Virus record (IMG/VR): IMGVR_UViG_3300044644_001125
Span: 62,001 to 126,000 of that record
Length of the DNA stretch: 64,000 nucleotides
Strand: one strand, 5' to 3'
The position numbers were made by a program, and so were the translations under genes. Positions 24,980 through 45,605 of the stretch are shown here, one piece after another. The notes under the pieces were generated by a model, which saw nothing but the letters and a program-made list of their open reading frames with translations, was not told the DNA's origin and made no database searches. Within the stretch, counting starts at the first letter, position 1, and each line of letters begins with the position of its first letter.

Positions 24980-25321
24980 TGCTGTTTTCCTGTAGTGCTT
25001 TGTTAAGGTGCGAGTAGTATATAACTACTCGCTTTATATGTCAACAGTTTATCTCAAATGTTCTTCTAGTAATTTCAACTGTTTTTTAGATAGGTTAAGT
25101 TCAGCTAATACGTTTCTAAAAGATGATGTAAGATAACCTGTAACAAAGGCATAGTTCACCTCTCCTTTGTTAAAATCTGCCGATGCTTGTTCTGCTGTTG
25201 TTTTCATATGGTCGATTACTGTTTCTAATAGGATTGGGTTTGTCATCGTCTTTACTCCGGTAGTGCTTGTTAAGGTGGGTACAGTATAGTTGTTCTGTAC
25301 CCATTTGTCAACAGTTATCTT

Positions 25322-25906: not shown

Positions 25907-25991
25907 GGTCGTATCCTCGTTGTAGTGTTTAATGTAGTGCCTTGTTTCAAGGTGGTGATAGTATATTCTTTTATCACCACCTTGTCAATCT

Positions 25992-26402: not shown

Positions 26403-26473
26403 TGTCTTTACTCCGTAGTGCTTTGTTAAGGTGGGTATATTCTAAAAGATAATACCCACCGTGTCAATACTTT

Positions 26474-27409: not shown

Positions 27410-27485
27410 GATTATTCCTCGTAACTAAAATCAATTATTATACGACATTATCTTTTAGTTTTTACCCATTGTCAATACCCTAGAC

Positions 27486-27514
27486 AAAAAAATGCCCAGC
27501 TACAAGAACTGGGC
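27486..27514 (-). terminator. Intrinsic terminator
   Basis: GCCCAG stem with U7 tail on minus strand. Confidence 0.75.
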
Positions 27515-27680
27515 GAGGTGAGTGTACATCAGGTGCTAATATCAGGCACTACTCCGATACTAGCCTCCTTTGGGTGGTAGATCCGCAAGGCACTACTCCT
27601 GCAAATCTATCTGGGTTGCCAATACAAGGCACTACTCCTGCATTGACGGGTACTACCTTAACACAACGAATTGTCTGTTT
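27486..27680 (-). ncRNA. Candidate three-hairpin sRNA with identical GGAGUAGUGCCU loops
   Basis: Hairpins 27618-27647, 27578-27609, 27535-27564 with different stems, fully paired only on the minus strand (G-U), and an identical 12-nt loop. Confidence 0.7.
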
Positions 27681-27693
27681 CATGTCTATTCTC

Positions 27694-27834
27694 CTAAGAG
27701 TAAAACTGTTTGATTACTTTCTTTGACTGGGTTCTATTCAACGCAATGCCAGTGGATAGAAAGTATCTTATATAATCTTCAACGAATTGTTCACGTTTTG
27801 CTTGTCTAATTTGTAATTTGCTTTTTGCTTTCAT
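27694..27834 (-). CDS. Small basic protein
   Basis: True start MKAKSK downstream of tRNA, AAGGT SD. Confidence 0.55.
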   Translation of the reverse strand: MKAKSKLQIRQAKREQFVEDYIRYFLSTGIALNRTQSKKVIKQFYS

Positions 27835-27855
27835 TGTCTTTACCTTTATGTTTGT

Positions 27856-27931
27856 TGGTGCCATTACAGGGATTCGAACCCCGATCTTACGCATTATGAG
27901 TACGCGGCATTAACCGTTATGCTATAATGGC
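27856..27931 (-). tRNA. tRNA with CAU anticodon (elongator Met or Ile2)
   Basis: GCCATTA/TAATGGC acceptor, GCAT/ATGC D stem, CT-CAT-AA loop, GTTCGAATC T loop, encoded CCA; lacks initiator features. Confidence 0.92.
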
Positions 27932-28325
27932 ATTTGTATATTCTAAAAGATAATTGAATCATTGTCAAGCATTATCTTTTAGGGTTGCCGTCCTTGGCAG
28001 TGAGTGTTTTATTGGTTTGTTAATTGTTCATCTAATGCACGTTTTGCAATTACTGCCCATAAGTAAGGGTGGCTAAATTCAGTATCATTCAATGCTTGTT
28101 CAACACGTTCATTGTCATCAGCATTCAAAGGTATTTCCAATTCAGTTACAGTTTCATCAATGAATGCTAGATACTCTGTGCCTCTAACATGACTGATAAG
28201 GTCAAATATTCTTTCTACTGCATTTTCTGTTAATGTTATTGTATAGGTTTTCATATGTAGTGCCTCTTTGTTTTATTAATGTGGTGATAGTCTAAAAGAT
28301 AATCACCACATTGTCAAGTTATATA

Positions 28326-28709
28326 TTAAGCCGCTAATGCGTATGCTTTGTTCCACTGTCCGATATTGATGTCAACATAAAAGCCTCTATCGTGATAATC
28401 TGACATAATGTCCGAATTATCATAGTTGCCTTCATTCATGATTTCAAGTGCTTTAGTCAAGAACTCGTGTGCAACACCTTTGTTAAACTGGTCGTCTAAC
28501 CAATAAGGATTGACTTGTATATAATCTTTGCTGTAGTTACTGTCTACTTCTTTTAACGCGCCATAGAAGTCGATTTTACCACCTTGTATATTAAGAACGA
28601 TGGTGTAGCAATGTTTACGCGCCACAGTTGCTTTGATACCGTATTCTTTTGCTAATGCTCTTAATCTTACTGCTTTCAACTCTTTTTGTTCTTTACTAAT
28701 GTATGGCAT
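28326..28709 (-). CDS. Early protein resembling polyvalent-protein LPD-type domain
   Basis: NYDNSDIMSDYHDRGFY..INIG.W motif. Confidence 0.55.
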   Translation of the reverse strand: MPYISKEQKELKAVRLRALAKEYGIKATVARKHCYTIVLNIQGGKIDFYGALKEVDSNYSKDYIQVNPYWLDDQFNKGVAHEFLTKALEIMNEGNYDNSDIMSDYHDRGFYVDINIGQWNKAYALAA

Positions 28710-30209
28710 GATTTTTACTCCGTAGTGCTTTGTTAAGGTGGGTACATTCTAGTTTAAAATGCACCCAAAGTCAAGCATTATCTTTTAGATATATTCACGT
28801 CCTGTTTCTTCAATCAACGCAGGTGTGAACCAATCACGGTATCTGGTGGCATTCTCACGACCAGCACCCCAGCCAAAATCTTCTACCCAGTATAACTGTT
28901 CACCATCAAACTCATCTATCTTACCTAAGATAACAAACTGTTTACCAAATACGTCATCATCACTAAAGCCTTGATTGGCTACTGCATCATCTTGAATGAA
29001 GTCTAAGAAGTGTGCCAAACCCATTGCGTGGTCTGAACCATTGTTCAGTAACCATTCTTTTTGTTCTCTAAGTAACGCCCAGTCTATGTTTTTAAGTGTA
29101 ATCATTTTCTATTCTCCGTAGTGCTTTGTTAAAGTGGCTCTAGTATCTCATATAAGAACCACCTTGTCAACTTTAATATTCTTCGTGTGTGATAATTCTT
29201 TCTACATCGTCTGGGACTGTTTCAATCGTATAATCTAAGATTTCTTCATCACCAGTCAATCTTTCGTTGATTTCTTCGGGTAACCAGTAGTCTAGTTTGT
29301 GGTCATCGTTTACTGTCAATAAGAATGTTACTTTTACTGTTTTCATTTGTAGTGCCTCTTTAGATTGTTTGATATATTTCTCGCTGTACTGTTTCTTCGT
29401 ATGCGTCTGCGCAGTCCTCTTGATTTGCATCGCATTCGCTACACGCTAATTGTGATTTCGGTCTGACGTAATTGTCATTGCATTCACATTCCCAATAAGA
29501 ATGGTTTAGCGTAATCAAACCGTAGTTTTCAATCACATCACCTTGTGCGTTTGTGTCTAACATGGTTATTGCTCCGTAGTGCTTTGTTGAGGTGGGTACA
29601 TTCTAAAAGATGATGTACCCAAAGTCAAGCATTATCTTTTAGTCAAACGCTTTGACTATTGAATCAATAAGATTGTCCATATATTCCACCACTTCACTGA
29701 TAGTATCATCTTCAAATTTTTCCCATATCGTAGCATAATCAATACAGTCAAAACTATCTGCTAATTCATTTGATAACATTTCATACGTTTTAACGGCATC
29801 ATTATCATATTCAGATAAGAATGTGTTAATTGCGATTTCAATTGCTTTTTCTTTTGTAGTCATGTCTATTACTCCGTAGTGCTTTGTTAAGGTGCGAGTA
29901 GTTTAATCTATCTCACACCAGTTGTCAACTATTATCTTTTAGTTTGCGGTTAACAAATCTAAAAATTCTTGGTATGGAATCATTACTTCAAATCCCATGT
30001 TGTTATCATAAACTACCCATGTTGAATTTTTAGATGACAGGCTTATGAACTTAATGAGTGCCGTGTTTAGTATTACTAATGTTTCATGCGTTGCAGTTGA
30101 ACCGCGTAGTTTTTCTGTTTTAGTTGCTTTAATGAACATGGTCTTTACTCCGTAGTGCTTTGTTAAGGTGCGAGTAGTATATTACTACTCGCTTTAGTTG
30201 TCAACTGTT

Positions 30210-30710
30210 TTATATAATCATTGTTTTTGGTATTCTGTAAACAATACCACTTGCAACACCTAATAGCGGTTTAACGCTTACCACTTTCACTACTGCGACA
30301 TATGAATTCCTCAACTGGATAATGTCACCAATCATCAAGTTAGCGGCACGTTTGCGTGTTTTACTAGCATTTTCGTGAAACTTAACTACATTATCGCGCC
30401 ATTCTTGGCAAGTAACTGTTGCCTCTTTTAAAAACTTTAGTGGGCAGTTATATTGATAAGGGTGCATACTTTCACACATATCTTTGTAACCATAGCCTTT
30501 ATCGTTTTTAAAGTATTCAAGTCTGAATAGCAGAATAACCTTTTGACCTAACACATTGTTAGGATTATAATCAACGTCTTTTTGTGATACTGTGTACAAA
30601 CCCCATAGGTTATTGCCAACCAACGACCATTGAGTTATTGCATCATTGTCTAATTTAATTTGTCTAACTAATGCTTGTTTGCCAGTGTTGCTATAAGATA
30701 ACCAACCCAT
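30210..30710 (-). CDS. Conserved phage early protein (GYKDMCESMHP type)
   Basis: MGW..., GYKDM.E.M.P..Y.CP..., EWR motifs. Confidence 0.7.
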   Translation of the reverse strand: MGWLSYSNTGKQALVRQIKLDNDAITQWSLVGNNLWGLYTVSQKDVDYNPNNVLGQKVILLFRLEYFKNDKGYGYKDMCESMHPYQYNCPLKFLKEATVTCQEWRDNVVKFHENASKTRKRAANLMIGDIIQLRNSYVAVVKVVSVKPLLGVASGIVYRIPKTMII

Positions 30711-30789
30711 TGTCTTTACTCCGTAGTGCTTTGTTAAGGTGGGTACAGTATAGTTGTTCTGTACCCAGTTGTCAACTCTTTTTTTTCAA

Positions 30790-30901
30790 CTATCAGTAAG
30801 TAAGTCTACCATTATTAAGATTTAACGTATTAACGAAAAATGTACTGGCTCAAGCCTTGTATTGGGTGCTTGAGGACACCCGCAGACCCACTTACTGATA
30901 G
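30790..30901 (-). ncRNA. Candidate structured ncRNA in a cassette slot
   Basis: 20-bp closing stem (30790-30809 with 30882-30901, G-U on minus strand) and inner CTCAAGC/GCTTGAG hairpin; promoter at about 30935-30972 with no SD or ORF. Confidence 0.55.
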
Positions 30902-31658
30902 CTCTTAGGCTCGTGCCTATCGGCACTCGCTAAGTTGGGTACATTATCTTTTAGAATGTACCCATTGTCAAGTATTATTTTAAACTACCTTACCTACGAA
31001 AACGTAATTATGTCTACTCATATCAGCTAGATTACCAATCGAGTTAATCCAAAAAGGATCTGTATTTTGTGAATCAAGTATAACCTTATTGGCAACTTCT
31101 TCTAGGTGGTGTACCTTGTTTACTTGAGTTTTACCTAGTAAGATACTATTGTCTAAATTATCTTTTAGTGCTTTAGCCACTTGCGCTAAGTCACTTTCGT
31201 GTCTGGTAAAACTACCAGCAATGGATATTGGGTTTATGTTCATATTAGCACCTATCACTTTGATGTGGCAAACAATGCCGTAAATGCCCACAGCATACTC
31301 TTAATGCCGCGCCATTGAGCGGCGCGTATTGCTGTAATAGATACTGTGGTGACCTGTGTTCTTCGTATGGTGGTGGCATCATTACTGTTGGTGACATTTG
31401 GCAACCATACAAAGAAACTAAAAGTATATAGGCTATTTTACGCATGACTGAGTACCTAACAAAACAAAACCGAAACAGATTAACCCAAAGCCAACTGCTA
31501 TTGCAATAATTGCCGTTAACCACTGGCTAGTCATTAAACCTAAGTCACCAATCGAACCTAGTGCCATACCTGTTGCGATTGAAGTCATCGCTTTACTTAA
31601 ATTTGTCATAGAGTGCCTCGTGTGCGTAGGTGTACCCGCCTTCACAGCGGGTAATCTG

Positions 31659-32162
31659 TTAGTGTCTTGTTGCTGGCTTGATACCAAAGATGGTATACAT
31701 CCGTTCATCAAACTTATCTAAGATAACGTCTGGTAGGATTTCCATAAGTTCATCTATGATTTCTGCCTTGAGTTGTTCAACATCAATCATTTCAACTTCG
31801 GTTTGTTTAGTTGTAAACTCGTTCTCTTGGCTTAATTGCAAGAGTACCGTTTCAAGGTTATGCAATGTTTTATCCTGTCGAGTGGCAACTTCCCAAAAAC
31901 CAATTCGATTATAGATAAAGATATAATCAGCATTAGTTTCATCTAAAAGATGATTGAGTGTCTTGTGTATCTCACTTTCATCTAGGTCACCAGTATCATC
32001 CGTTATTTCTGCTCTATCTCCTATCAACATCAATTTAGAGATGTTACTTTGGTCGATGTTAGCTAAAAGATAACGTCCAACATCTTTTAGAGTTCCTTCG
32101 TGGATATAGACGGATTCAACGACACCACCTTCTCTTACCCATGCAACTGTACTACTAGGCAT
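31659..32162 (-). CDS. Diverged paralog of 25992-26402
   Basis: SVYIHEGTLKDVGRYL, LMLIGD, DYIFIY pattern. Confidence 0.6.
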   Translation of the reverse strand: MPSSTVAWVREGGVVESVYIHEGTLKDVGRYLLANIDQSNISKLMLIGDRAEITDDTGDLDESEIHKTLNHLLDETNADYIFIYNRIGFWEVATRQDKTLHNLETVLLQLSQENEFTTKQTEVEMIDVEQLKAEIIDELMEILPDVILDKFDERMYTIFGIKPATRH

Positions 32163-33738
32163 TTTCTACCTCTCTTGCGATTATATCTGCTATTGTTTCG
32201 TCAGTGGCTTTATAGATAAGCCAGTTACCAATCTGTACCTTATGCTTTGCGTTCATGTACTTTAAACCAAAGTTACCCTCAAAGATTCGTTGTTTAGCGG
32301 CTGGGATGATGATAACATCCTCGCCAATGTACAAGTGGGTTCTGTCGGTATTATCAGTCAACAACGCCTTAAAGGTTGTTTCACTGGTATGGTTATCAAC
32401 GTACTGTTGGAACAAATCCGCCATTGGACTTGTTACTACTTCTTCAAACTTCATGTTATCGTTCCTTGTTAGCTCACCGCTAACGCGGTTCGCACGTTAA
32501 CGGTGAAGTTGTTAGTTAAGCTGGGTTAAGTATCTGTAATCCGTAGATTAAATCTTCGTCTGTAATCTCATCGTATGAGAGTATGTATTGTTCGCCATCA
32601 TCAACTGTATGTACATGAATCATCTTATCCTCTGGTGATAAGCCATCAATCACATAATCAACGTCATCTTTTACAATTAAGAATGCTTGTTCGATTAAGG
32701 TATTAAGTTGTTCTCTTGTTCTCATTGGTAGTGCCTCTTTGTTAGTGTAGTGGTATGGTATCAATTATCTTTTAGGTTGTCAACTTATTTCTTACTGTCC
32801 ATTAAGTCTTGCATACCGTCTAAGTGGTAGATTCGATTCTTATGGAATACAAACCCACCTATGTTTGTAAAGTAAATTTTGCAGTAGTTAGTTGCAATGT
32901 CTTTTTGGAAGTGGGTGAATACTGCAATACCCGCAATCAACGCGCCAATCGCAATACCACTAACAAATGCTCTTAATCCCCTAAAGTTATCTGATACTTC
33001 TACTAATCTTGGTTTCTGTTCGTAAGTTGCCATCTGTAGTGCCTCTTTGTTAAGTTGTGGCTATTCTAAAAGATAATCGAACTGCTGTCAACAACTTTCT
33101 GTAACAAGGTTCTCATGTCTTGGCATTCGCTGTCATCTTCTTCTGAAAACTCATAACCAAACGCAATAATATATTCTAAGGCAGTTTTAATCAAGTCTAC
33201 TTCATTTGCGTCAAAGTTCATGTTACTGTACTCTATAGTTATGTTTAAGGTCAATGTCTGGTGTCAATGGCATTGGTTTAGCTTTCGTATCAGTTCTTGG
33301 TAAGTGGATTTGTTTATGGTTAACGATAACATACTCTACCGTAAACTTATCTGGGCAAATCTGATACAAGGTTTCACCACTGCAATGTACATGGTCATAG
33401 AATCCTGTTTCATCTGGGAAGTCTGGTACATCAATAACCGCGTGTGCATTGGTGGTAAAAATGGCTAGTGCTAGTAGTAATTTCTTCATTGTCTTTTCTC
33501 GATTGTTGCTATTGTTCCAACTAAGTTTTGTGCAAATGTTGCTTTGAATTCTTGGTTATTCAGTGAAGTTGTTTTAACCCATTCATCGATAAAGTAACTT
33601 ACTGGTGTTAACTTTCTTACTTGGGACTTAGCCACTCCTGTATGGGTTGCTAAGGTTTGTTCTATTGTGGTCATGTCGCTATCCTCTGTTAAGTTGCAGG
33701 TATCTTACCCTAAAATACCTGCATTTGTCAACAACTCG

Positions 33739-34197
33739 TTAGTAAAATTCCGGCATGAATTCTTCTTCAAAGTCATCGATAAAATCGAGTTCATTAAAGT
33801 CATTATCTGCAAACTGTTCCATGTCTACATCACTTGGTGTATAATTGCCTTTCTTTGCCGCTACATAGCTTGTAACTCTATCAACCAGTCTTTCCATTGG
33901 CTTGTCTAAGTTCTTCCCAGTGACGGTGCCTGTGTTGCATTCTAACTTGATGTCAAATAACACATCCGCCAAGCCTACTGAATATTTAATGTCGCAATCG
34001 AATAAGAAGTTTACCGCGCCACTGGTGTTAGATTTTAAACCGTTTTGATAGTAATCATAGTATACGCGTCCAATGGCTCTCATCATCTCACCTTCAACAC
34101 TTCCAGCATTACCTGCTTTTGGTACGATTTCTTTTAATGCGTTATATTCGTTTTGCATTTTGCCTAGATTGTTCCAGTATATGTTTTTCATTTTCAT
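33739..34197 (-). CDS. Conserved phage early protein
   Basis: YWN..GK.Q, GEMMRA...YYDYYQNG. Confidence 0.7.
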   Translation of the reverse strand: MKMKNIYWNNLGKMQNEYNALKEIVPKAGNAGSVEGEMMRAIGRVYYDYYQNGLKSNTSGAVNFLFDCDIKYSVGLADVLFDIKLECNTGTVTGKNLDKPMERLVDRVTSYVAAKKGNYTPSDVDMEQFADNDFNELDFIDDFEEEFMPEFY

Positions 34198-35573
34198 TTA
34201 CTCCGTAGTGCTTGTTAAGGTGGTGATAGTTTAATTGGAAACTATCACCGTGTCAAGTTATCTTTTAGTCTTCAGATTCTCTGCGGTCTAATTCAATGGC
34301 TAGTAACTCTTGCATAACTTCAGTAAAGGCATCTCTTGATTCTAATTCTGAATACAACTCAAACTTGAGTTCCAGTTCATCGTATGTCATTTCACTGATT
34401 TGGTTTTTGATTTCATTTATGTTCATTGGTAGTGCCTCTGGGTTGGTTAGGTTAGGCTCGCGCGTTGCGCTCGCGAGCCATGTATGTTGTTTAGATGATA
34501 CAATCGTTATCTGCATCAATTTCCAATGTTACGCATTCGGTGGAAATATCGTCACCATTATCAATCCATGCCAATCCAACACGATTTTTATCTATTGTGA
34601 ATTGTTCATCTGCGTATGCAACCGATACCACTACCGGTAAGTCTGCATCGAATGTGGATAATACTGCAATTAGTTCTTTGATTGTCATTATCTTTACTCC
34701 GTAGTGCTTGTTAAGGTGGTGATAGTTTAATTGGAAACTATCACCTTGTCAAGTTATCTTTTAGGTTAGGCTCGCGCGTTGCGCTCGCAAGCCTTGTATG
34801 TTTAGGTTGACACCTACTTGATTAGAGTAGTTAGAAGGTGCAGTTTCCTTCCATGCCAAGTATCACTTGCACTGCACCCTTATGTCATTATCTTTTAGGT
34901 TATTGGTCTTCGTATGCTCTGGCTAGTAACTCTGCCGTTTTAAAGATATGGTGAACTCTATCATCTTTTAGTGCGATTTCAAGAGCCTCCTCGTCATCAA
35001 TCGAGAAGTCATTGTCAAAGTGTTCTACCATGTACTCCTCGAAACTATCTGCCTCAGATTCTAGCAAGTAGTCTAAGATACTAGACAAACGGTTTAAGTT
35101 GGTTTCTGTTAAGGTGATTGTTCTGTATTGTTCGCTCATTGTCTATTACTCCGTAGTGCTTTGTTAAGGTGCGAGTAGTATATTACTACTCGCTAAGTTT
35201 GTCAACTTCTATTCATGGTACATTTTACCGTTAAATTCTACTGCTTGTGGTTCATCGTCAGAATCTGCCCAATCAGTCCAGTAAATCGCGTCATCCGCGT
35301 AAGCATCTTCGTAAGTGGCATATCCAGCCGCAATACTCCATTCAACTGCATCTTTGATATTCTTAAAGTATTGGTCTGCCTCGCTGGTAACCCATCCTGC
35401 GTTCATACCTTCACCAGTGATTGAACAAACTCGCATCCAAGTTTTAAATTCTGTAGTCATTGTCTTTACTCCGTAGTGCTTTGTTAAGGTGCGAGTAGTA
35501 TATTACTACTCGCTTTAAATGTCAACTATTTTTTTCTTCGTACTGGCTCGTGCCTATCGGCACTCGCAGAAAT

Positions 35574-35867
35574 TTAATCGATGGTTCTAACTGCTCTGAC
35601 GTATCCGTCACCGTAACTCTTACCGTAGTAACTCTGAATCCCGATTGACATATGATTACTCCATGCGTTGACATCATTATACTCAGTAGATGACCAGTAG
35701 TAATCTTCCTCAAACTCATTTTCCGATTCATAAATCTGCGTTAGTTCGTCTGTGGTTGGTAAACGCCATCCTGTTTTCTCGTTGATATTAAGCGAAAAGC
35801 AGTATTGGCTGGCATCATACCAGTTGGCTTGAATCTCTGTTTCTTTTGGTGCGATTTCAATGTTCAT
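35574..35867 (-). CDS. Mini DUF1566/C-lectin-fold protein
   Basis: W.DA..YC...GWRLPT..EL...YWSSTE...VRAVR. Confidence 0.8.
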   Translation of the reverse strand: MNIEIAPKETEIQANWYDASQYCFSLNINEKTGWRLPTTDELTQIYESENEFEEDYYWSSTEYNDVNAWSNHMSIGIQSYYGKSYGDGYVRAVRTID

Positions 35868-35941
35868 ATCTTTTACTCCGTAGTGCTTGTTAAGGTGGGT
35901 ACATTCTAGTTGAAATATACCCAGTTGTCAACTATTTGTTT

Positions 35942-36202
35942 TTAGATTATTCTGGTTTGTTTTATTACTGCACATTCGATTCTATCTGCTGAAATTTCTT
36001 CACCAAACTCGCCATCCGTGCCTTTGAATAGTACAGTGCTACCAGCTACTTCAACTAAAGCAACCTCGACCACTTCGCCACAATCTTTAACATATATTTG
36101 ATAGTCTTTGGCAACCTCGTAATCGATTGAATCCGCATAATCCGAGTATTCTACCAAGTATGGCATGATTTCAGCTAAGGTGGTTTCTGTCATTGTGTAC
36201 AT
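35942..36202 (-). CDS. Early protein (paralog A)
   Basis: MYTMTETT...IECAV shared with 36916-37179. Confidence 0.75.
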   Translation of the reverse strand: MYTMTETTLAEIMPYLVEYSDYADSIDYEVAKDYQIYVKDCGEVVEVALVEVAGSTVLFKGTDGEFGEEISADRIECAVIKQTRII

Positions 36203-36915
36203 GGATATTCTCCGTAGTGCTTTGTTAAGGTGGGTATATTCTAGTTGAAATATACCCAGTTGTCAAGTTATCTTTTAGGTTAAATCGTGTTCTAATTTAG
36301 GGTATGTTGCGCGTAAGGTTTCAATCTTTGCTATTAAGGCAGTTATATCTGCTACTATCTCGTCCCTAGCAGTGACTTCACTCTCTGTCAGTGACTTTAA
36401 GTAATCAGTGTCATAGATGTCAAACATAGCTTTAATGTCACGTCTGTATGACTGTACCATGCTATAAAGGTCTGACCGTTTTTGAATGCCGTTCCAGTAT
36501 AAACTACTCATTGGCTTTACTCCGTAGTGCTTTGATAAGGTGGTGATAGTTTAATTGAAAACTATCACATTGTCAATCTTTTTTACCCGTGAGTTAGTTC
36601 TGCCTCAGCATCTTCTAGTGCATCAGCGACTTCTTCTTTAAAGTTGATATTATGACAATCACAGTAACGAATAATATCTACTAACAAATCTGCTACGGTT
36701 GTTTCATAACCATAATCTTCTAATTTTAATATTGCCGCAATCTTTTCAACACCAGTGTAAAAAGAAAACTTTTTAAATACTTCTTCTCCTTCTGGCATTT
36801 CCTGTAGTTCTGCTAACACAAGTTTAATCGAATTGTTCATGTTGTTTACTCCGTAGTGCTTTGTTAAGGTGGGTATATTCTAGTTGAAATATACCCAGTT
36901 GTCAACTATTTGTTT

Positions 36916-37179
36916 TTAGATTAGTCTGTTTTGTTTCATTACAGCGCATTCAATACTATTGACTTTGGCAGTACCGCATTTACCACCACCAATGTTTCTG
37001 AATGTCACGCTATCACCTAAGACTTCTACTGTTCCTACTTCTACCACATCACCAAACTCTTTTACATAGAGTTGAATATGACGTGCTGGTTCGTATTGGA
37101 AGAATCCATTGTCCTCCTCGTCAAACAATTCCAAGTAAGGTAATAAATCAGCAAAGGTGGTTTCTGTCATTGTGTACAT
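36916..37179 (-). CDS. Early protein (paralog B)
   Basis: Paralog of 35942-36202. Confidence 0.75.
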   Translation of the reverse strand: MYTMTETTFADLLPYLELFDEEDNGFFQYEPARHIQLYVKEFGDVVEVGTVEVLGDSVTFRNIGGGKCGTAKVNSIECAVMKQNRLI

Positions 37180-37246
37180 GGATATTCTCCGTAGTGCTTT
37201 GTTAAGGTGGGTACATTCTAAAAGAAAATACCCACCATGTCAATCT

Positions 37247-37960
37247 TTATTTTGTGCGAATAACGAATCCGCTAGTATCTTTTTTCGCGCGTCCTTTGGC
37301 TTTCAATCCAATAACCAAGTCTAGGTTAGTATTATTGAATCTTAAGTCATCCAAGTCACCATCAACTACAGGAACACCATTCCAAGTGGCGGGTACTTCA
37401 TCGAATACCACTGCAATAGAGTAACCTTGTTCCAATGCTTTCATTACGTCTGCATCGTTTGATTCTGCTCTACTGAATGTTAAATGGTAGTTACCTAGGT
37501 GCTTAACCTTACGATTAAGAATCTTACTGTAGTCGTAGAATTGTACTGTAGGGAAGTGTTCAAACACGTTCTTACCACCAACGTAAATGTTTTCCCATAG
37601 AATGTCACTTGTACCATTTAAACGGAATACAGGTGTCATACCTTTACGCTCTGCTTGTTTAATGGCTTTTGTTATATCAGTGATTAAGGTTTCCATGAAA
37701 ACCTCTCTGTTTGTTTTAAAGAACACGGTTCTACGTTTACGAGCCTCTTGTACCGCGTTAGTGGTTTCACCTGCTTTAAACATACCACCATGTCCAGCAG
37801 TATTCAAACAAGCCGCTCTGCATCCAGCAGTAGCCTTTGGGCAAGTGTTCATTACACCAGATAAGTCACTTGGTGCTAGGTGAAGAATGTAGGATTTATA
37901 ACCTTGTGATTCACCTTTAATGATTTTAAGGTTTGAAGTAGTGAGAAGTGAAAATGCCAT
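37247..37960 (-). CDS. Gp88-like Fe-S protein
   Basis: CPKATAGCRAACL, RLNGTSD, QFYDYSK, YHLTFS, GDLDDLRF, GLKAKG. Confidence 0.75.
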   Translation of the reverse strand: MAFSLLTTSNLKIIKGESQGYKSYILHLAPSDLSGVMNTCPKATAGCRAACLNTAGHGGMFKAGETTNAVQEARKRRTVFFKTNREVFMETLITDITKAIKQAERKGMTPVFRLNGTSDILWENIYVGGKNVFEHFPTVQFYDYSKILNRKVKHLGNYHLTFSRAESNDADVMKALEQGYSIAVVFDEVPATWNGVPVVDGDLDDLRFNNTNLDLVIGLKAKGRAKKDTSGFVIRTK

Positions 37961-38031
37961 TGTAGTAACTCCGTAGTGCTTTGTTAAGGTGGGTACATTG
38001 TATTCTCAATGTACCCATTTGTCAAATCTTT

Positions 38032-40061: not shown

Positions 40062-40394
40062 CTAGGATTTGATCAACCATACAAACGATTGATTGGCAGC
40101 ACAACCAAGCACGAGTCCAGGGTTATTCACTATCATTTCGATTCTACCATCAGCGGTATTCTCCTGAGTTACATGTGGATAGTTCATCTCTTTAATCATA
40201 GAGTTGGTATAGAGATCACATTGATAACGACTCATCCCACGCTTCCAAGCTACTATGATATGTGAATTCTGTTTCATTGCATCATAGTCAACTAAGAACC
40301 CGGCGTTCAACATGTTCTGTTTGATATCATCCAAGGTATATGCATTGGCGTTTAACGATGCTAGTAATGCGATTACTGCTAATAACTTTTTCAT
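40062..40394 (-). CDS. Secreted hypothetical protein
   Basis: Signal peptide MKKLLAVIALLASLNANA. Confidence 0.65.
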   Translation of the reverse strand: MKKLLAVIALLASLNANAYTLDDIKQNMLNAGFLVDYDAMKQNSHIIVAWKRGMSRYQCDLYTNSMIKEMNYPHVTQENTADGRIEMIVNNPGLVLGCAANQSFVWLIKS

Positions 40395-40503
40395 TTTGAT
40401 TTACTCGGTTAGTTAGAAAGTTACTATTATACATGTATATGTACAGATGTCAAGTACCTGCACAGCGGGTAGATAGGTATAGCGAGGCACGCTAGTGCCG
40501 AGC

Positions 40504-42285
40504 CTAGTCTTCGTCATCCTCGTCGTCATATTCATACAAGTACTCTTCATCCCCATACTGAACACTATCGTATCTATGATCAGAACCATCGAAGTAATCT
40601 GTACCCCAAGAGTCACGATGGCGTTTAGCATAACGTTCGCGTTCCTCCTTAATGGCTCGCATCTCTGGTTCAATTAATGAATCATCAATATCCGATTCAA
40701 TGATCCGAGTAGTATTACCACGTGACAATTCATATTCCTGTTCACGTATGACTAATCTATGAATGGCAACCTTACGGTCATTATCCTCAACTCTAGGACC
40801 AACCATCGCAGTATACCCAGTAAGTTTCTCACCCACTAACTTCCAATATGGCATACCAAACGCTGTTTTGATACGCAACTCGATCTCCTGCAGATCATCA
40901 AATGCAATCTTATTTCGCACAATGAACGCGTCATGCACACCGATTAGTATCTCATGTCCCATAGTTTCCGCAATCGATGTAGCACTAGTCATGATCGCAG
41001 TCTCAGCATGCTGGTACAAGTAAGCCATCTCTTTGGCCTTATTACGACACCCTTTGTCTGTTTTAGTACAGGTTAACGGAGCCAATATACTTTTATTCTT
41101 CTCTAGGATAAACTCAGCTAACTCCATATGCTCATGGATAAATCCACTAATCAAATCATGATTCAAAAATGCATCACGAATTTCATTATCTTTTAGGATA
41201 ACACCTAACGAATTAACCAATGGATTGTCTGGATCTTTTGGGTTGGGTATGACAATCCCGAATACCTTCGCACCAAAAGATATGGCATTCATCATAGCCT
41301 TGATCTTTTTACGACACCACTCAGGATCATACCGGTGAACATTACCCGCTTTGTCTTTGTAAGTACGGCATAAGAACACGTGCTTCAAACAGTCCTGTAT
41401 AAAGTCTTCCTTATCTGTCAGGTAATGATTAGTATACTGGAACCTTTCTGGTTTTACTTCTCGGTTATACGCAGCTGCATAACTATACTTCCAGGCAATG
41501 GATGAAGAACTGATATCATACTGCCATGAATCACCCAATACATTCTTACGCATTTCCCTTGGGATGTTATGCATCGATAACCCAACATAATACAATCGGC
41601 CAAATACACTCTGCTTCTTCCGCTGGAACCAATACCCATCACCTTTATGTGCTAGGGCCAAGATCATCTTAGCCTTACGTATATAACTCTTGCGTTGGTC
41701 CTCATCCAACTTAGTACTGTCATAGATAAGCCAATTCAAGTAATTAGTTAACGTTGTAGTATTAACTTCAATTGGGTGAAACATCGCTAAACAATCATCA
41801 GCTGACATTAATCCCTGACTTGCATATAAAACCTCTGGATATTCCCTGTAGAATAAATCATCATACATTTCATTATCAAGGAAATCATCAGTCTGGATGT
41901 TAAGTTGTTTTTCTTCGTATTCTTCTAGGCTCATGTCAAATAGATCTGTGTAAGTACAACGGTTGTCAATTAGGGAGATAGTAGATTTTACCTTCTGTAA
42001 ACTATTACCCATGTTTAGAACTTTTATGATTGGCTTATTATCTTTTAGCCAGGAATGAACTCGTACCTTCTTACCTTTCGAATCGGTAATTCTCCCACCG
42101 GTATCATGTAATACCTTCATTGGGATCTGATACTGACTATACGCAGTACATGCGTAATCGTTTGTAATTGATATATGTATCAAGTTAGACAAGACCTTAG
42201 AATACTTCTCAAGTGCTTTATCTACTGATTTTTTAGAAAACTCCGCATACATTGCTTCGTACACAGACTCGTGGATTTCGATCAT
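40504..42285 (-). CDS. Family-A (right-hand) polymerase-fold protein
   Basis: GRLY, motif A YDISSS, motif B KIKAMMNAISFG, YQHAE, motif C VHDAF. Confidence 0.65.
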   Translation of the reverse strand: MIEIHESVYEAMYAEFSKKSVDKALEKYSKVLSNLIHISITNDYACTAYSQYQIPMKVLHDTGGRITDSKGKKVRVHSWLKDNKPIIKVLNMGNSLQKVKSTISLIDNRCTYTDLFDMSLEEYEEKQLNIQTDDFLDNEMYDDLFYREYPEVLYASQGLMSADDCLAMFHPIEVNTTTLTNYLNWLIYDSTKLDEDQRKSYIRKAKMILALAHKGDGYWFQRKKQSVFGRLYYVGLSMHNIPREMRKNVLGDSWQYDISSSSIAWKYSYAAAYNREVKPERFQYTNHYLTDKEDFIQDCLKHVFLCRTYKDKAGNVHRYDPEWCRKKIKAMMNAISFGAKVFGIVIPNPKDPDNPLVNSLGVILKDNEIRDAFLNHDLISGFIHEHMELAEFILEKNKSILAPLTCTKTDKGCRNKAKEMAYLYQHAETAIMTSATSIAETMGHEILIGVHDAFIVRNKIAFDDLQEIELRIKTAFGMPYWKLVGEKLTGYTAMVGPRVEDNDRKVAIHRLVIREQEYELSRGNTTRIIESDIDDSLIEPEMRAIKEERERYAKRHRDSWGTDYFDGSDHRYDSVQYGDEEYLYEYDDEDDED

Positions 42286-42500
42286 CTTATTCTTCCTATG
42301 GTTTGTGTTACCAGTTCTCTGATCAAACCACCCCTAATTCGGTTGGCCAACCTAGCTAGGGGTTTAAGAAAAATGATTATGATCAATCGAACTTTTAACT
42401 CATGTATTTAGTACAGGACCTCCATTATCTTTTAGTCGAATTAATACTATCACAGCCATAACCAATCAGTCAACTAATATATCTAAAAGATAACTTCATT

Positions 42501-42562
42501 AATAGTTCAATTATCTTTTAGTGATATAGACCATCAATAGTTCAATTATCTTTTAGTGATAT
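42501..42562. repeat. 27-bp direct repeat x2
   Basis: AATAGTTCAATTATCTTTTAGTGATAT at 42501 and 42536. Confidence 0.85.
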
Positions 42563-42875
42563 CTCCAATTGCTCGATGGATTTCTTGTGCAATTACTAGA
42601 GGGATTCTGAGGAGAATCCAGGAGAAGAAGCAAAGACCAAGGAAGCCACCAAAGGCATAAGGAGAAGATCAACAAATCTCTTCTCCCTTAGGGAGACACT
42701 TTTTCGGTCTGCAGGCCGCATTCTATATATACCTGATTATGACAGTTATGTTACAAGCTCGTGCCTACCGGCACTCGCAATCGAAAAAATTCACACACTA
42801 GTCAACCCAGGGAACTTTTCAGGCAATAAAAAGGCAGAACTAAGTCTGCCTGTGTATGAGTCAAATACATCATTG

Positions 42876-43367
42876 TTATAGGTATGAATCCACCTTAACT
42901 ACTTTAATACAATTACCTTCATCTTCGGTAACGGTAAAATCAGAAACAAATGCATCTGGTCTTAGCAAATACGCTTCGGAGATTGGTTCTTTGTACCAAA
43001 CAGCCAACCCATTAAATATAGAATACGATCTATGAATTGCTTTACATGACCAGCATCTATTACCATACTTATTTTCCCATCCATGATCTTCCGTACCTTT
43101 TAAAACTTCACCATACAATTCTATCTCATAGGTTGGAATAACTCGTTTAATAAGATTAACATTGTTTATGGCAGTCCAACGATTAAACAACTGTGGATTA
43201 GTATGAAACTTTGGTATATACCACGATTTCTGCTCGGGTGACCAACAGGCACCAAGTTTCTTCGCTATGGGTTTATGTGTAAATGGTACATCAATTATTA
43301 TACCACCCGAAAAATGTAACGATTGCTTTTTCCTTTTTTCCTCACGGAATTTTTCAAGAATATTCAT
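42876..43367 (-). CDS. DUF5710-like domain protein
   Basis: IDVPFTHKPIAKKLGACW....KSWYIP. Confidence 0.7.
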   Translation of the reverse strand: MNILEKFREEKRKKQSLHFSGGIIIDVPFTHKPIAKKLGACWSPEQKSWYIPKFHTNPQLFNRWTAINNVNLIKRVIPTYEIELYGEVLKGTEDHGWENKYGNRCWSCKAIHRSYSIFNGLAVWYKEPISEAYLLRPDAFVSDFTVTEDEGNCIKVVKVDSYL

Positions 43368-43770
43368 AATTCACACCTAAAAGATAATTGCCAACTATTA
43401 ACTCTATACACACATATACACACGTATATACACCAACATGCACAGCGGGTATACTACAAGCTATTACCAAACTTATCCACTGGCTTACCTATTCGATCAC
43501 ACTCAACCAGAGGTACCGTCACTGTTATACGGATTGACAACACCATTACTATCAACAAAAACACTATACACAAAATTACATTATCTCTACTCATAAAACT
43601 CTCCTATACGTATGGGTACATAACGCTACAGCGGGTATATTACCCTAAAAGATAATGGGCATACAGCATCTCCCAATACTGTACACCCAACTGTTGTAAA
43701 ACTATTCTTTATTATATCCAACTATATACCTATAGTCAAGATATATTGCGAGCACCGCTAGGTGCGAGCC

Positions 43771-44373
43771 TTAGTCAAAAACAAACAACTGCTTAACGGT
43801 TTTAGCTCTAGTTAAGGCTGGGTAATCACCATACCAGTTCTTATAACAAATTCTGAAACTAGTCGCATTGGCATATCCACACTTACTAGCAATGTCATCT
43901 ACTGAAGCATATCGACCACTATCCAACAACGACTTAGCCAATGTCATACGCACATCTCTACTTACCATAGAAAACGTGTTATCAAAGAAGGCACTAAACA
44001 AAGCATCTACCTTATGCACAGGTAACCCAGCTGCCAAGTATACCCCTTCCTTATCCACACCAGCCTCAATCTTAGCTACTAACTTCTGAATCAATGCCAA
44101 GTCACTCATCTGATAACCAGCAGCTGCCACTCTCTCAGTTAAATCAGCAGCAGTTGGCTTGTATCGCATGTTAGTATATAGGGTCTGCAACGCAGTATTC
44201 ACTAATAATGAATTACCAGACATCAACCCACTACGCAATTCCGCTACCGGTAAAGTTTTACCTAGGGCTAAACCCAACTCCACATGAAACGCACTTGCCT
44301 CTTCTTCAGTCAACCCTTCTGCCGCTGCCCAACTAAATGTTTTAACTGCTTCGATTTTAATCATTGTATACAC
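43771..44373 (-). CDS. AraC-type HTH protein
   Basis: RMTLAKSLL..SVDDIASKCGYANATSFRICYKNWYGDYP. Confidence 0.75.
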   Translation of the reverse strand: MYTMIKIEAVKTFSWAAAEGLTEEEASAFHVELGLALGKTLPVAELRSGLMSGNSLLVNTALQTLYTNMRYKPTAADLTERVAAAGYQMSDLALIQKLVAKIEAGVDKEGVYLAAGLPVHKVDALFSAFFDNTFSMVSRDVRMTLAKSLLDSGRYASVDDIASKCGYANATSFRICYKNWYGDYPALTRAKTVKQLFVFD

Positions 44374-44900: not shown

Positions 44901-45605
44901 TTATGCGTGTACTAACTCTGCCAACGCTTTCTTACCCTTCTCACGCTGCGCATTCTGTCTGTACTCCAATGGCGAAACACCCATCAACTGCCCAAAAGCA
45001 CTGCGGAACCCGGCTTTAGAAAATGCCAATGATTTTGCCACATCCGAGATCTTAGCAATTGACCCATCTTCTAACATCTTAGCACCACGCATCAAGGTAA
45101 TCTCACGATGCGTAGATGCAAACGTACCCTCAAAGAATACTTCGAATAACTTCTCAAACTGGAATGGTCTCAATCCCAAGTCTCGTTGCATCTTATCCTG
45201 CTTTAAGTTAACATAGGTAGATAACATAGTCACTACGTTCTTTGCTACTGATAACTCTTCACCAGTAAATCCTGCAGCAGCAATACGACCTGCCAAGTCA
45301 GATTCTTCTGGGGTATACTTCGTACCAGTATAAAGTTCACCTAGGGCCTGTTTAGCCAACTTGATGTCACTGCTAGATGGTGCAGCCTTAGCTACCACCT
45401 TCTTTACGTCAGGTTGTACCACTGGGTCTACTACCTCAGCACTAGCCTTTAACTCAGCCACCGGTAACTTCGTATGGGTTTGTCCCAGTGCAATTGTAAA
45501 GTCTTTAAGGAACTGCTCCGCTTCTTCCCTACTAGCATTTACTCCTGCCTTCCAATTGTATGTTTCTACGGTAATAGTGTGCTTTGATACTTGAACTAAA
45601 CTCAT
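44901..45605 (-). CDS. AraC-type HTH protein
   Basis: KISDVAKSLAFSKAGFRSAFGQLMGVSPLEYR. Confidence 0.8.
   Translation of the reverse strand: MSLVQVSKHTITVETYNWKAGVNASREEAEQFLKDFTIALGQTHTKLPVAELKASAEVVDPVVQPDVKKVVAKAAPSSSDIKLAKQALGELYTGTKYTPEESDLAGRIAAAGFTGEELSVAKNVVTMLSTYVNLKQDKMQRDLGLRPFQFEKLFEVFFEGTFASTHREITLMRGAKMLEDGSIAKISDVAKSLAFSKAGFRSAFGQLMGVSPLEYRQNAQREKGKKALAELVHA

What the first reader, a model, noticed from the sequence alone, without database searches (positions are those of the whole stretch)
40504..42800. Orphan PolA-fold protein beside an iteron-like region
Seen: 593-aa protein with motif A/B/C-like segments but no recognisable exonuclease, upstream of which lies about 500 bp of non-coding DNA with 27-bp direct repeats, clustered TTATCTTTTAG and a purine-rich tract. 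Inference: a dedicated origin-priming or initiator polymerase, or a divergent single-subunit RNA polymerase that might read the hairpin elements.
Basis: inference. Interest (0 to 1): 0.6.

Follow-up and report, generated by a model that had tools for sequence, protein, structure and literature searches.

The report
Minimal Pol I-fold polymerase, jumbo phage
A 327-kb freshwater phage carries an early gene for a stripped-down, proofreading-less polymerase of the Pol I / T7 RNA polymerase fold that belongs to a large unnamed family of mobile-element polymerases, while the "iteron-like" DNA in front of it is ordinary regulatory DNA built from motifs found all over the phage genome.

Summary
The ORF (40504-42285, minus strand, 593 aa) is real. 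Its predicted structure is a family-A right-hand polymerase: Klenow Z 15.2, T7 RNA polymerase Z 9.7. The catalytic residues R230, D257, K329, F337-G338 and H451-D452 are invariant across 84 divergent relatives. There is no exonuclease domain.

It is not an orphan. A profile search finds 1157 cluster representatives, none with a Pfam, PHROG, NCBIfam or PADLOC name. Most close relatives lie in integrase-bearing islands of freshwater Burkholderiales, next to a DUF6641 gene, and one relative is fused to DUF6641. The nearest named structures are virophage TV-Pol-helicase proteins.

The upstream 590 bp exists as described, but it is not a private iteron array:
- CTAAAAGATAA occurs 169 times in the genome, mostly between genes and with no orientation bias.
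- The GCGAG hairpin occurs 54 times.
- The region reads as a terminator, promoter-like blocks and a leader carrying one unique, conserved palindrome.
- A better origin candidate lies at window 12209-13266.

Best reading: an accessory TV-Pol-like primase-polymerase made early in infection. That function is inferred, not shown. The residues that exclude ribonucleotides in Pol I are absent, so RNA synthesis remains possible.

The parts
40504..42285 (-). Gene for the 593-aa minimal Pol I-fold polymerase (P0001)
   Evidence: ORF and translation. The AF2 model has pLDDT 80.7. Family-A DNA polymerases are the top fold matches.
41776..42285 (-). N-terminal alpha/beta domain (residues 1-170), family-specific, not an exonuclease
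   Evidence: Modelled alone at pLDDT 88.6. No significant fold match, best Z 4.6. The weak match list is dominated by winged-helix, Rep and ORC DNA-binding domains. This is a lead only.
40816..41797 (-). Thumb-palm-fingers polymerase core (residues about 163-490). It carries the FGR hairpin (R230), motif A (D257), motif B (K329, F337-G338), Q425/E428 and motif C (H451-D452).
   Evidence: VIA-align range 163-490 against Klenow, Z 15.2. These residues are invariant columns in 84 sequences. Motif register taken from a collinear hhalign run.
40507..40815 (-). C-terminal extension (residues about 491-593): two long helices, then a disordered acidic/aromatic tail found only in the jumbo-phage clade
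   Evidence: pLDDT is below 50 for residues 554-593. The tail is present in P0001-P0006 and absent from the 520-aa island proteins.
42330..42363 (-). Imperfect 17+17-nt palindrome/hairpin in the leader, about 45-78 nt before the ATG
   Evidence: Nearly invariant in four phages whose proteins are only 48-84% identical. Single copy in the 327-kb genome. Covered by a 222-nt, 100%-identical contig from an RNA library.
42425..42556 (.). Cluster of four CTAAAAGATAA boxes: 42425 (-), 42483 (+), 42511 (-), 42546 (-). It includes two 31-nt direct repeats (42497-42527, 42532-42562).
   Evidence: The same box occurs 169 times genome-wide.
42444..42473 (-). Proximal sigma70-like promoter (TTGACT, 16-18 nt, TG-extended GATAGT/TAGTAT)
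   Evidence: Consensus scan. The block is conserved in the related phages. Promoter function is inferred.
42601..42675 (+). Purine-rich tract (pyrimidine-rich on the gene strand)
   Evidence: 70-80% purine in 30-nt windows. A CT-rich stretch occupies the same position in the relatives.
42682..42718 (.). Two short G+C-rich hairpins (42682-42696 and 42705-42718)
   Evidence: Terminator-like scan on the + strand. The block is conserved in the relatives. Role unknown.
42706..42755 (-). Distal conserved promoter-like block ending in TAGAAT (42720-42725)
   Evidence: Invariant columns in the four-phage alignment. Function is inferred.
42757..42778 (-). One copy of the genome-wide GCGAG-stem-GNTA-stem-CGAGC hairpin element
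   Evidence: 54 copies in the genome and 0 in shuffles, with compensatory stem changes between copies.
42832..42851 (-). Intrinsic terminator of the upstream DUF5710 gene (42876-43367)
   Evidence: Terminator scan: 7-bp stem followed by a T-run. Conserved in the relatives. The DUF5710 assignment comes from Pfam.

Best explanation
The gene encodes a catalytically intact, proofreading-less, minimal right-hand polymerase of the Pol I / T7 RNA polymerase superfamily. It belongs to a large unnamed clade. That clade is carried mainly by integrase-bearing genomic islands of freshwater Betaproteobacteria and by phages, and it is closest in structure to the TV-Pol polymerases of transposons, virophages and phages.

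In this 327-kb lake phage the replisome is supplied by other genes: a family-B polymerase, a DnaG-like primase and a DnaB-like helicase. The protein is therefore an accessory enzyme. It appears to be transcribed by the host RNA polymerase from a regulated promoter region.

The most likely job (inferred) is template-dependent synthesis that starts or restarts DNA chains, as a primase-polymerase. The family-specific N-terminal domain would hold the template. The acidic C-terminal tail would dock on other replication proteins.

The 590-bp upstream region is its transcriptional and translational control region, not an iteron origin.

Shown: the fold, the conserved active site, the absence of a nuclease, the family size and contexts, and the genome-wide nature of the repeats.
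Inferred: priming activity, the substrates, and the roles of the terminal domains and of the leader palindrome.
For: Fold:
- The AF2 model has pLDDT 80.7.
- VIA-align gives Klenow Z 15.2, Pol theta 14.4, Pol nu 13.6 and T7 DNA polymerase 11.8.
- The top Foldseek PDB matches are Pol I enzymes, E 5e-8.

Active site: R230, R246, D257, K329, F337, G338, E428, H451 and D452 are invariant in 84 sequences with 18% mean column identity.

No nuclease.

Family:
- 1157 representatives. No Pfam, PHROG, NCBIfam or PADLOC name.
- 80 loci in genomes, mostly Limnohabitans, Polynucleobacter and other Burkholderiales.
- Conserved island gene order with two tyrosine integrases and restriction-modification/Abi cargo. 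This matches the contexts described for one TV-Pol subset (PMC2579912).
- A DUF6641 gene lies in 59 of the 75 loci that carry the polymerase, directly downstream in the loci inspected. It is fused to the polymerase in P0065.
- After three unnamed phage proteins, the best BFVD matches include the virophage TV-Pol-helicase replication proteins, E 1e-10 to 4e-7 (PMC3671162).
- An A-family polymerase can act as a primase: CcPol-MP (PMC7581432, PMC10061031).

The phage has its own PolB, primase and helicase.

Synteny and upstream blocks are conserved in four related phages.
Against: - No biochemical evidence exists for any member of this clade.
- Sequence profiles do not reach known families. PDB profile searches are empty. 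hhalign against Pol I and against T7-type RNA polymerase sets gives about 1% probability. The family profile finds nothing in phage Ma-LMM01, which carries a TV-Pol.
- No helicase or SSB-like partner lies next to the phage gene. The downstream ORF has a signal peptide, and the phage has no DUF6641.
- The phage already has a DnaG-type primase, so a second primase is not obviously needed.
- By motif register the Pol I residues that exclude ribonucleotides are absent: E710 corresponds to S262 (family consensus V), and F762 corresponds to N333 (family consensus T). The product could therefore be RNA.
Confidence: 0.5

Rival explanations
1. It is a minimal single-subunit RNA polymerase, or an RNA-making primase used for transcription, that serves a class of phage genes. 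It might start at hairpin or palindrome elements.
For: - Single-subunit RNA polymerases match the fold: yeast mitochondrial RNA polymerase Z 9.8, T7 RNA polymerase Z 9.7, N4 RNAPII Z 7.6.
- Motif C is HDA, without the second carboxylate of the Pol I HDE motif, as in T7's HDS.
- There is no Glu at the steric-gate position and no Phe at the F762 position. CcPol keeps both and prefers dNTPs (PMC7581432).
- No RNA polymerase beta-like domain and no sigma70 region 2 were found in the 327-kb genome.
- A unique conserved palindrome lies in the gene's own leader.
Against: - DNA polymerases match clearly better (Z 15.2 against 9.8).
- The Tyr used by T7 RNA polymerase for ribose selection (Y639) is Phe here, and is invariant.
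- Most relatives are in bacterial integrative islands, which have no evident need for their own transcriptase.
- No oriented, genome-wide promoter was found. The CTAAAAGATAA box shows no strand bias relative to genes. The GCGAG hairpins mostly follow -10-like hexamers, so they look like transcript 5' ends made by the host enzyme.
- Early cassettes carry sigma70-type promoters.
Confidence: 0.15
2. It is a primer-dependent gap-filling, repair or translesion DNA polymerase, a Pol I / Pol theta-like helper with no priming role.
For: The best structural matches are repair-type A-family enzymes, including exonuclease-less Pol theta and Pol nu. The phage's replicative enzyme is a PolB, so a Pol I-like helper for lagging-strand maturation or damage bypass is conceivable. 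CcPol alone only extends primers (PMC7581432).
Against: - Island relatives are core genes of small integrative elements with no other recognisable replication gene. That fits an initiating enzyme better than a repair helper.
- There is no 5' nuclease domain for Okazaki-fragment processing.
- The family-specific N-terminal domain and the DUF6641 partner or fusion suggest extra template-handling functions.
Confidence: 0.2
3. It works in phage-host conflict (defence or counter-defence) rather than in replication, for example by making a decoy or signalling nucleic acid.
For: In the islands the gene sits beside restriction-modification, Abi and Mrr-type cargo. In the phage it heads a long run of small early genes of unknown function.
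Against: No PADLOC model matches it or its partner. Its position is constant within the island core while the defence cargo varies, as expected for a backbone gene. There is no precedent among A-family polymerases.
Confidence: 0.1
4. The upstream 590 bp is a replication origin used by this polymerase.
For: - The region holds four boxes, two 31-nt direct repeats and an AT-rich stretch (77-80% A+T at 42466-42555).
- It also holds a purine-rich tract and a unique conserved palindrome.
- In SCCmec the preferred priming site lies next to the replication genes (PMC7581432).
Against: - The box is genome-wide, with other clusters of 3-8 copies.
- There is no GC-skew inflection here; skew follows gene strand.
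- The region contains a terminator and conserved promoter-like blocks. Part of the leader is found in an RNA library.
- A genuine 12-nt tandem array at the strand-switch point beside the primase and helicase genes is a better candidate.
Confidence: 0.12

Closest known systems
TV-Pol family (Iyer, Abhiman and Aravind 2008, PMC2579912); includes the N-terminal domain of the virophage Sputnik V13 / OLV25 primase-helicase (PMC3671162)
   Same: - It has the same minimal core: thumb helices, a beta-hairpin with an invariant Arg, a palm with two Asp, and fingers with a conserved Lys.
- There is never a nuclease domain.
- It is carried by viruses and by integrase/resolvase-bearing elements in restriction-modification hot spots.
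- Virophage TV-Pol-helicase proteins are the best named structural matches.
   Different: - No D5-type helicase is fused or adjacent.
- The N-terminal domain is alpha/beta, not the all-helical domain described for TV-Pol.
- The Arg of the RxxxK motif is not conserved.
- The family profile does not detect the TV-Pol-bearing phage Ma-LMM01, so membership by sequence is unproven.
CcPol-MP / PolA-SSB primases of SCCmec and other Bacillota elements (PMC7581432, PMC10061031)
   Same: An exonuclease-less A-family polymerase encoded by an integrative element. In the island relatives a small partner gene lies immediately downstream (DUF6641), and in one protein it is fused to the polymerase.
   Different: - CcPol is recognisably Pol I-like in sequence and keeps the E710 and F762 equivalents; this family lacks both.
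- No helicase is present in the operon.
- The fold of DUF6641 is unknown.
- The phage copy has no such partner.
- The complex prediction gave no verdict.
Canonical family A DNA polymerases (Klenow, Taq, T7 gp5, Pol theta, Pol nu)
   Same: The fold matches over about 280 residues at Z 12-15. The equivalents of the TGR hairpin, motif A Asp, motif B Lys / aromatic-Gly, Q849 and the motif C His-Asp are all present.
   Different: - It has no PF00476 match and no exonuclease domain.
- Motif C reads HDA, not HDE.
- There is no steric-gate Glu, and N/T replaces F762.
- It has an unrelated N-terminal domain.
T7-like single-subunit RNA polymerases and N4 RNAPII
   Same: The superfamily fold matches at Z 7.6-9.8. 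Motif C resembles the HDS type, and a small residue occupies the steric-gate position.
   Different: - It has no PF00940 match.
- Phe replaces the ribose-sensing Tyr.
- At 593 aa it is too short to hold the promoter-recognition modules.
- No oriented promoter family was found in the genome.

Membership tests
Family A DNA polymerase (Pol I type, Pfam PF00476) | Klenow-type thumb-palm-fingers fold | tested here: met
   Klenow Z 15.2 over 282 residues at rmsd 4.3. Twelve chains score Z>=8, nine family-A DNA polymerases and three single-subunit RNA polymerases. Foldseek E 5e-8.
Family A DNA polymerase (Pol I type, Pfam PF00476) | Two catalytic aspartates in motifs A and C | tested here: met
   D257 and D452 are invariant in 84 sequences. 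They lie at a strand end and at a beta-turn in the model.
Family A DNA polymerase (Pol I type, Pfam PF00476) | Significant match to the family's sequence model | tested here: not met
   PF00476 matches neither the protein nor any of 84 relatives. It finds nothing in the whole phage genome. PDB profile searches are empty.
Family A DNA polymerase (Pol I type, Pfam PF00476) | Deoxyribose selection residues (E710 steric gate, F762) and the HDE form of motif C | tested here: not met
   By motif register, D+5 is S262 (family consensus V), K+4 is N333 (family consensus T), and motif C reads HDA. The register comes from alignment, not from superposed coordinates.
T7-like single-subunit RNA polymerase (PF00940) | Match to the family model | tested here: not met
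   No PF00940 match in the protein. The genome-wide search was also empty, but its control genomes were empty too, so only the protein-level scan counts.
T7-like single-subunit RNA polymerase (PF00940) | Ribose-sensing Tyr in motif B (T7 Y639) | tested here: not met
   The position is F337, invariant in the family. Register.
T7-like single-subunit RNA polymerase (PF00940) | A conserved, gene-oriented promoter repeated through the genome | tested here: not met
   The only abundant motifs are the box, which has no orientation bias (56 co-oriented against 60 opposed), and the hairpin, which lies after -10-like hexamers.
T7-like single-subunit RNA polymerase (PF00940) | rNTP-dependent, promoter-specific RNA synthesis | not testable with these tools
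   Needs enzymology.
TV-Pol (PMC2579912) | Minimal core: thumb helices, Arg-bearing beta-hairpin, palm with two Asp, fingers with RxxxK | tested here: met
   The model shows helices 176-188 and 195-214, a hairpin at 218-234 carrying invariant R230, D257, D452 and invariant K329. The Arg four residues before K329 is present in the phage clade only.
TV-Pol (PMC2579912) | No nuclease domain fused or linked | tested here: met
   No nuclease appears in the conserved island core.
TV-Pol (PMC2579912) | Carried by viruses or by elements with integrase/resolvase in restriction-modification hot spots | tested here: met
TV-Pol (PMC2579912) | Fusion or linkage to a D5-like helicase, or the all-helical N-terminal domain | tested here: not met
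   No helicase lies in the phage neighbourhood or the island core. The N-terminal domain has five to six strands as well as helices.
TV-Pol (PMC2579912) | Detectable homology to an accepted TV-Pol | tested here: inconclusive
   Structure says yes: the Zamilon and Qinghai Lake virophage replication proteins match at E 3e-9 and 4e-7 in BFVD, and Atlas clusters carrying D5_N/DUF5906 match at TM 0.39-0.44. Sequence says no: there is no profile hit in phage Ma-LMM01.
PolA-SSB primase (CcPol-MP) | Small ssDNA-binding partner encoded just downstream and bound to the polymerase | tested here: inconclusive
   In the phage, the downstream 110-aa protein has a signal peptide and the genome has no DUF6641. 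In the islands, a DUF6641 gene accompanies the polymerase in 59 of 75 loci and is fused to it once. Its fold was not determined, and the complex test gave no verdict.
Iteron-type replication origin | Repeats private to one locus, bound by the element's initiator | tested here: not met
   The box has 169 copies spread over the genome and several other clusters.
Iteron-type replication origin | Compositional or strand-switch signature of an origin | tested here: not met
   There is no skew inflection at about 104.5 kb of the genome, and the locus lies inside a minus-strand gene block.

The most novel reading that the evidence does not exclude
This clade would be a functional intermediate between Pol I-type DNA polymerases and T7-type RNA polymerases. 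It would be a 340-residue core that has lost both deoxyribose-selecting residues and starts chains de novo with ribonucleotides. In the phage it would begin at the unique conserved palindrome in its own leader, which would then be a hairpin start site (origin or promoter) rather than a translational operator. That would add a third kind of primase/transcriptase chemistry in the A-family fold, widespread in freshwater mobile elements.
Probability: 0.15. Interest if true: 0.85.

Novelty: new variant of a known kind. Interest (0 to 1): 0.55.

Why it matters
TV-Pol-type minimal A-family polymerases were predicted in 2008 to be primase-polymerases. According to the CcPol authors, only CcPol, which is much closer to Pol I, has been tested at the bench.

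This clade is large, with more than 1100 clusters at 50% identity. No family library searched here names it, and it appears both in a jumbo phage lineage and in defence-carrying islands of abundant lake bacteria.

It also lacks the residues that make Pol I a DNA-only enzyme. Its substrate choice therefore bears on how DNA and RNA synthesis diverged within one fold, and it could yield a compact new polymerase or primase.

For annotation, the result turns a hypothetical protein into a testable enzyme. It also shows that the apparent iterons are part of a genome-wide regulatory code.

Tried and rejected
- Pfam, PHROGs, NCBIfam and PADLOC scans of the protein and its relatives found nothing.
- PDB sequence and profile searches found nothing meaningful.
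- Megablast against phage records found no match. tblastn found only weak hits in two Desulfovibrio phage records.
- hhalign of the family against T7 RNA polymerase, T7 DNA polymerase, a Pol I set and a set of three RNA polymerases gave probabilities of about 1% or less. The alignments were used only for motif register.
- The family profile against phage Ma-LMM01 found no hit.
- The ESM Atlas feature search gave scores under 0.9, so leads only.
- Rfam on the upstream region found nothing credible.
- The leader palindrome pattern found no further copies in IMG/VR.
- Complex prediction of an island polymerase with its DUF6641 neighbour returned 'no answer'. It is not evidence either way.
- The idea that the box is simply an upstream element of sigma70 promoters holds for only 19 of 169 boxes, against about 3 expected. 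I therefore call it a protein-binding site of unknown reader.
- The idea that the downstream 110-aa ORF is an SSB-like partner was rejected, because it has a signal peptide.
- The metatranscriptome contig only shows that part of the leader and the gene start are present in an RNA library. It is not proof of transcription.
It was corrected.
Full report
**What the window is.** The window is bases 62001-126000 of a 327,256-bp IMG/VR virus record, estimated 92% complete. It is a jumbo phage.
- DNA from it, or from close relatives, is found in lake and freshwater metagenomes from 20 studies.
- The window encodes a DnaG-like primase (4981-5994) and a DnaB-like helicase (5984-7822).
- The genome also has a family-B DNA polymerase at 256-260 kb.
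- The genome has no PF00476 match, no RNA polymerase beta-type domain, no sigma70 region 2 and no DUF6641. A PF00940 search was also empty, but so were its control genomes, so that search says nothing.

**The observation.**
- The ORF 40504-42285 on the minus strand gives a 593-aa protein, P0001.
- The 590-bp gap upstream (42286-42875) holds no ORF of 50 aa or more apart from one that merely overlaps its far end.
- Two 31-nt direct repeats, 97% identical, lie at 42497-42527 and 42532-42562.
- Four copies of the 11-mer CTAAAAGATAA lie in the gap, three on the gene strand and one inverted.
- A stretch of about 75 nt is 70-80% purine on the plus strand.
- One GCGAG hairpin lies at 42757-42778.

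**The protein.** No Pfam, PHROG, NCBIfam or PADLOC model matches it, and no PDB sequence does either. A word-based search found 29 clusters of relatives. The alignment showed invariant residues exactly where a family-A polymerase needs them.

An AlphaFold2 model built on that alignment is confident, with pLDDT 80.7 and pTM 0.70. Fold comparison is unambiguous.
- Foldseek ranks Pol I enzymes first, at E 5e-8.
- The exhaustive VIA-align search gives:

| Match | Z |
|---|---|
| Klenow (282 residues, rmsd 4.3, model residues 163-490) | 15.2 |
| Pol theta | 14.4 |
| Pol nu | 13.6 |
| Apicoplast polymerase | 13.1 |
| T7 DNA polymerase | 11.8 |
| Yeast mitochondrial RNA polymerase | 9.8 |
| T7 RNA polymerase | 9.7 |
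| N4 RNAPII | 7.6 |

In a deeper alignment of 84 sequences (18% mean column identity), R230, R246, G251, D257, K329, F337, G338, E428, H451 and D452 are invariant. In the model D257 ends a strand and H451-D452 sit in a beta-turn. That is the motif A and motif C geometry. The enzyme is almost certainly active.

The N-terminal 170 residues, folded alone at pLDDT 88.6, have no significant structural match. The best Z is 4.6 and Foldseek finds nothing below E 0.65. The weak list is rich in winged-helix domains of initiators and regulators, which I treat only as a lead. It is not a DEDD exonuclease. The last 40 residues are a disordered acidic/aromatic tail that only the jumbo-phage clade has.

**DNA or RNA product?** The evidence is mixed.
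- DNA polymerases match the fold better.
- A collinear but statistically insignificant profile alignment, together with the motif spacing, gives this register: K329 = Klenow K758, N333 = F762, F337 = Y766, Q425 = Q849, D452 = D882, A453 = E883. With D257 = D705, the steric-gate E710 corresponds to S262 (family consensus V).
- Both residues that Pol I uses to reject ribonucleotides are therefore missing, and motif C is HDA rather than HDE.
- CcPol, the only characterised mobile-element A-family primase, keeps both residues and prefers dNTPs (PMC7581432).
- On the other hand, the Tyr that T7 RNA polymerase uses to select ribose is an invariant Phe here.

Sugar specificity cannot be called from sequence.

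**Not an orphan.** An exhaustive profile search finds 1157 representatives at E<=1e-3 and 408 at E<=1e-30. Those listed are mostly 450-650 aa and most match over nearly their full length. None of 84 sampled members has a polymerase Pfam domain.

Close relatives (84-47% identity) are in syntenic early regions of related uncultured phages. The 520-aa relatives (about 30% identity) are in bacterial genomes. Eighty loci were found, nearly all freshwater Burkholderiales such as Limnohabitans and Polynucleobacter.

Clustering of neighbours shows a conserved element. Its usual gene order is: small integrase-like gene, DUF6876, a 63-aa gene, the polymerase, DUF6641, about six unknown genes, then a 460-aa (or alternatively a 341-aa) tyrosine integrase. 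Variable restriction-modification, Abi or Mrr cargo is inserted in some loci. A DUF6641 gene accompanies the polymerase in 59 of the 75 loci that carry it, and one protein, P0065, is a natural polymerase-DUF6641 fusion. Eleven more distant relatives sit on 6-48-kb viral contigs.

**Closest known class.** In the viral structure library, three unnamed phage proteins rank first. Most of the ranks that follow have no name; among those that do are virophage replication proteins (Zamilon, E 3e-9; Qinghai Lake virophage, E 4e-7). They rank ahead of every hit named as a Pol A. The Atlas search gives clusters carrying D5_N/DUF5906 helicase domains. In virophages such as Sputnik and OLV this kind of protein is the N-terminal TV-Pol domain fused to a superfamily 3 helicase (PMC3671162).

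The TV-Pol family was defined computationally as a minimal A-superfamily polymerase of transposons and viruses, and was predicted to prime and polymerise. One subset lies next to lambda-type integrases or resolvases in restriction-modification hot spots (PMC2579912). That description fits the island contexts found here.

Membership by sequence is not shown.
- The family profile finds nothing in phage Ma-LMM01, which carries a TV-Pol.
- There is no D5 helicase.
- The N-terminal domain is alpha/beta, not all-helical.

I therefore file it as a TV-Pol-like new variant, not as a proven member. The PolA-SSB primases (PMC10061031) are a functional precedent. The phage copy, however, has no partner: the downstream 110-aa ORF has a signal peptide. 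The complex test on an island pair gave no verdict.

**The upstream DNA.**
- *The box.* CTAAAAGATAA occurs 64 times in the window against 0.06 expected, and 169 times in the genome. Of those, 116 are intergenic, although only about 9% of the genome is non-coding. It has no orientation preference relative to flanking genes. It occurs singly, in inverted pairs 29 nt apart around sigma70-like promoters of a repeated early cassette, and in other clusters of 3-8 copies. Only 19 boxes are followed by a good -35/-10 pair, against about 3 expected. It behaves like the binding site of an unidentified regulator, not like a private iteron or an oriented promoter.
- *The hairpin.* The GCGAG-stem-GNTA-stem-CGAGC element occurs 54 times (0 in shuffles) with compensatory stem changes. 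It often lies 5-8 nt after a TATAAT-like hexamer, which suggests a 5'-terminal mRNA hairpin.
- *Conserved blocks.* Alignment of the region from four phages shows a terminator, the hairpin, two promoter-like blocks and a nearly invariant 34-nt palindrome 45-78 nt before the start codon. The palindrome is single-copy in the genome. It is contained, with the first 124 nt of the gene, in a 100%-identical 222-nt contig of a metatranscriptome library. That is presence in an RNA library, not proof of transcription.
- *Palindromes in the islands.* Island relatives often carry unrelated palindromes at a similar position, so an operator role is plausible.
- *Skew.* GC skew follows gene strand and shows no inflection here.

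**A better origin candidate.** Window 12209-13266 is a 1.05-kb non-coding region at the point where gene orientation flips, 4.4 kb from the helicase gene. It has a true tandem array (a 12-nt unit, 5.6 copies, 92% matches) plus degenerate copies and other repeats.

**Verdict.** The fold claim is right and the enzyme is interesting. The 'orphan' and 'iteron' labels are wrong. The initiator-polymerase idea is the best available reading, but it rests on analogy and context.

Noticed in passing
window 12209-13266: A 1.05-kb non-coding region lies at the switch from plus- to minus-strand genes, near the primase and helicase genes. It has a 12-nt tandem array (12713-12778, 5.6 copies), degenerate extra copies, two CTAAAAGATAA boxes and repeated GGTTCAGGCC blocks. 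It is a plausible replication origin.
   Followed up: partly
whole window (64 sites) and whole genome (169 sites): The 11-mer CTAAAAGATAA, usually followed by T, is about 1000-fold over-represented. It is mostly intergenic and has no strand bias relative to genes. It often supplies the TAA stop codon of the preceding gene. It is probably the site of an unidentified phage DNA-binding protein.
   Followed up: partly
window about 18000-38000 (genome 80-100 kb): A repeated early-gene cassette has this order: box, TTGACA, 17 nt, TATACT/TAGAAT (sometimes overlapped by an inverted box), then a highly conserved 5' leader ending in GGAG before each small gene.
   Followed up: partly
54 sites genome-wide, e.g. 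window 40482-40503 (+), 42757-42778 (-), 43748-43769 (+): A GCGAG-stem-GNTA loop-stem-CGAGC hairpin element shows compensatory stem changes between copies. Many copies lie just after -10-like hexamers and 11-40 nt before start codons. The copy at 40482-40503 points antisense into the 3' end of the polymerase gene.
   Followed up: partly
genome about 34-35 kb, 165-166 kb, 232-233 kb and 310-312 kb (outside the window): Four copies of a repeated non-coding region each carry several boxes and shared sequence blocks. Another cluster of six same-strand boxes lies at about 134 kb.
   Followed up: no
window 43771-44373 (-) and 44901-45605 (-); 42876-43367 (-): Two paralogous AraC-type HTH_18 proteins and a DUF5710 protein lie just upstream of the polymerase gene. 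The HTH_18 pair is in conserved synteny in the related phages. They are candidates for reading the box.
   Followed up: no
L010:1-3394 (a related phage contig): A relative of this phage carries Cas5fv-like and Cas3 genes a few kb upstream of its polymerase homologue, suggesting a phage-borne type I-F-like CRISPR-Cas system.
   Followed up: no
L004, L005 and L014-L093 (Burkholderiales genomes): An undescribed integrative island family has a conserved core of about 12 genes: two integrases, DUF6876, the polymerase, DUF6641 and unknown genes. It carries variable restriction-modification, Abi and Mrr cargo and is common in Limnohabitans and Polynucleobacter. It could be a phage satellite or a defence island.
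   Followed up: partly
genome 256955-260417 (outside the window): The family-B DNA polymerase matches PF00136 in two pieces about 2.4 kb apart, in separate open frames. This suggests a split gene or an intervening element.
   Followed up: no
window 40062-40394 (-): The 110-aa ORF directly downstream of the polymerase gene has a typical signal peptide, and a perfect TTGACA-16-TATAAT promoter lies at 40453-40426.
   Followed up: no
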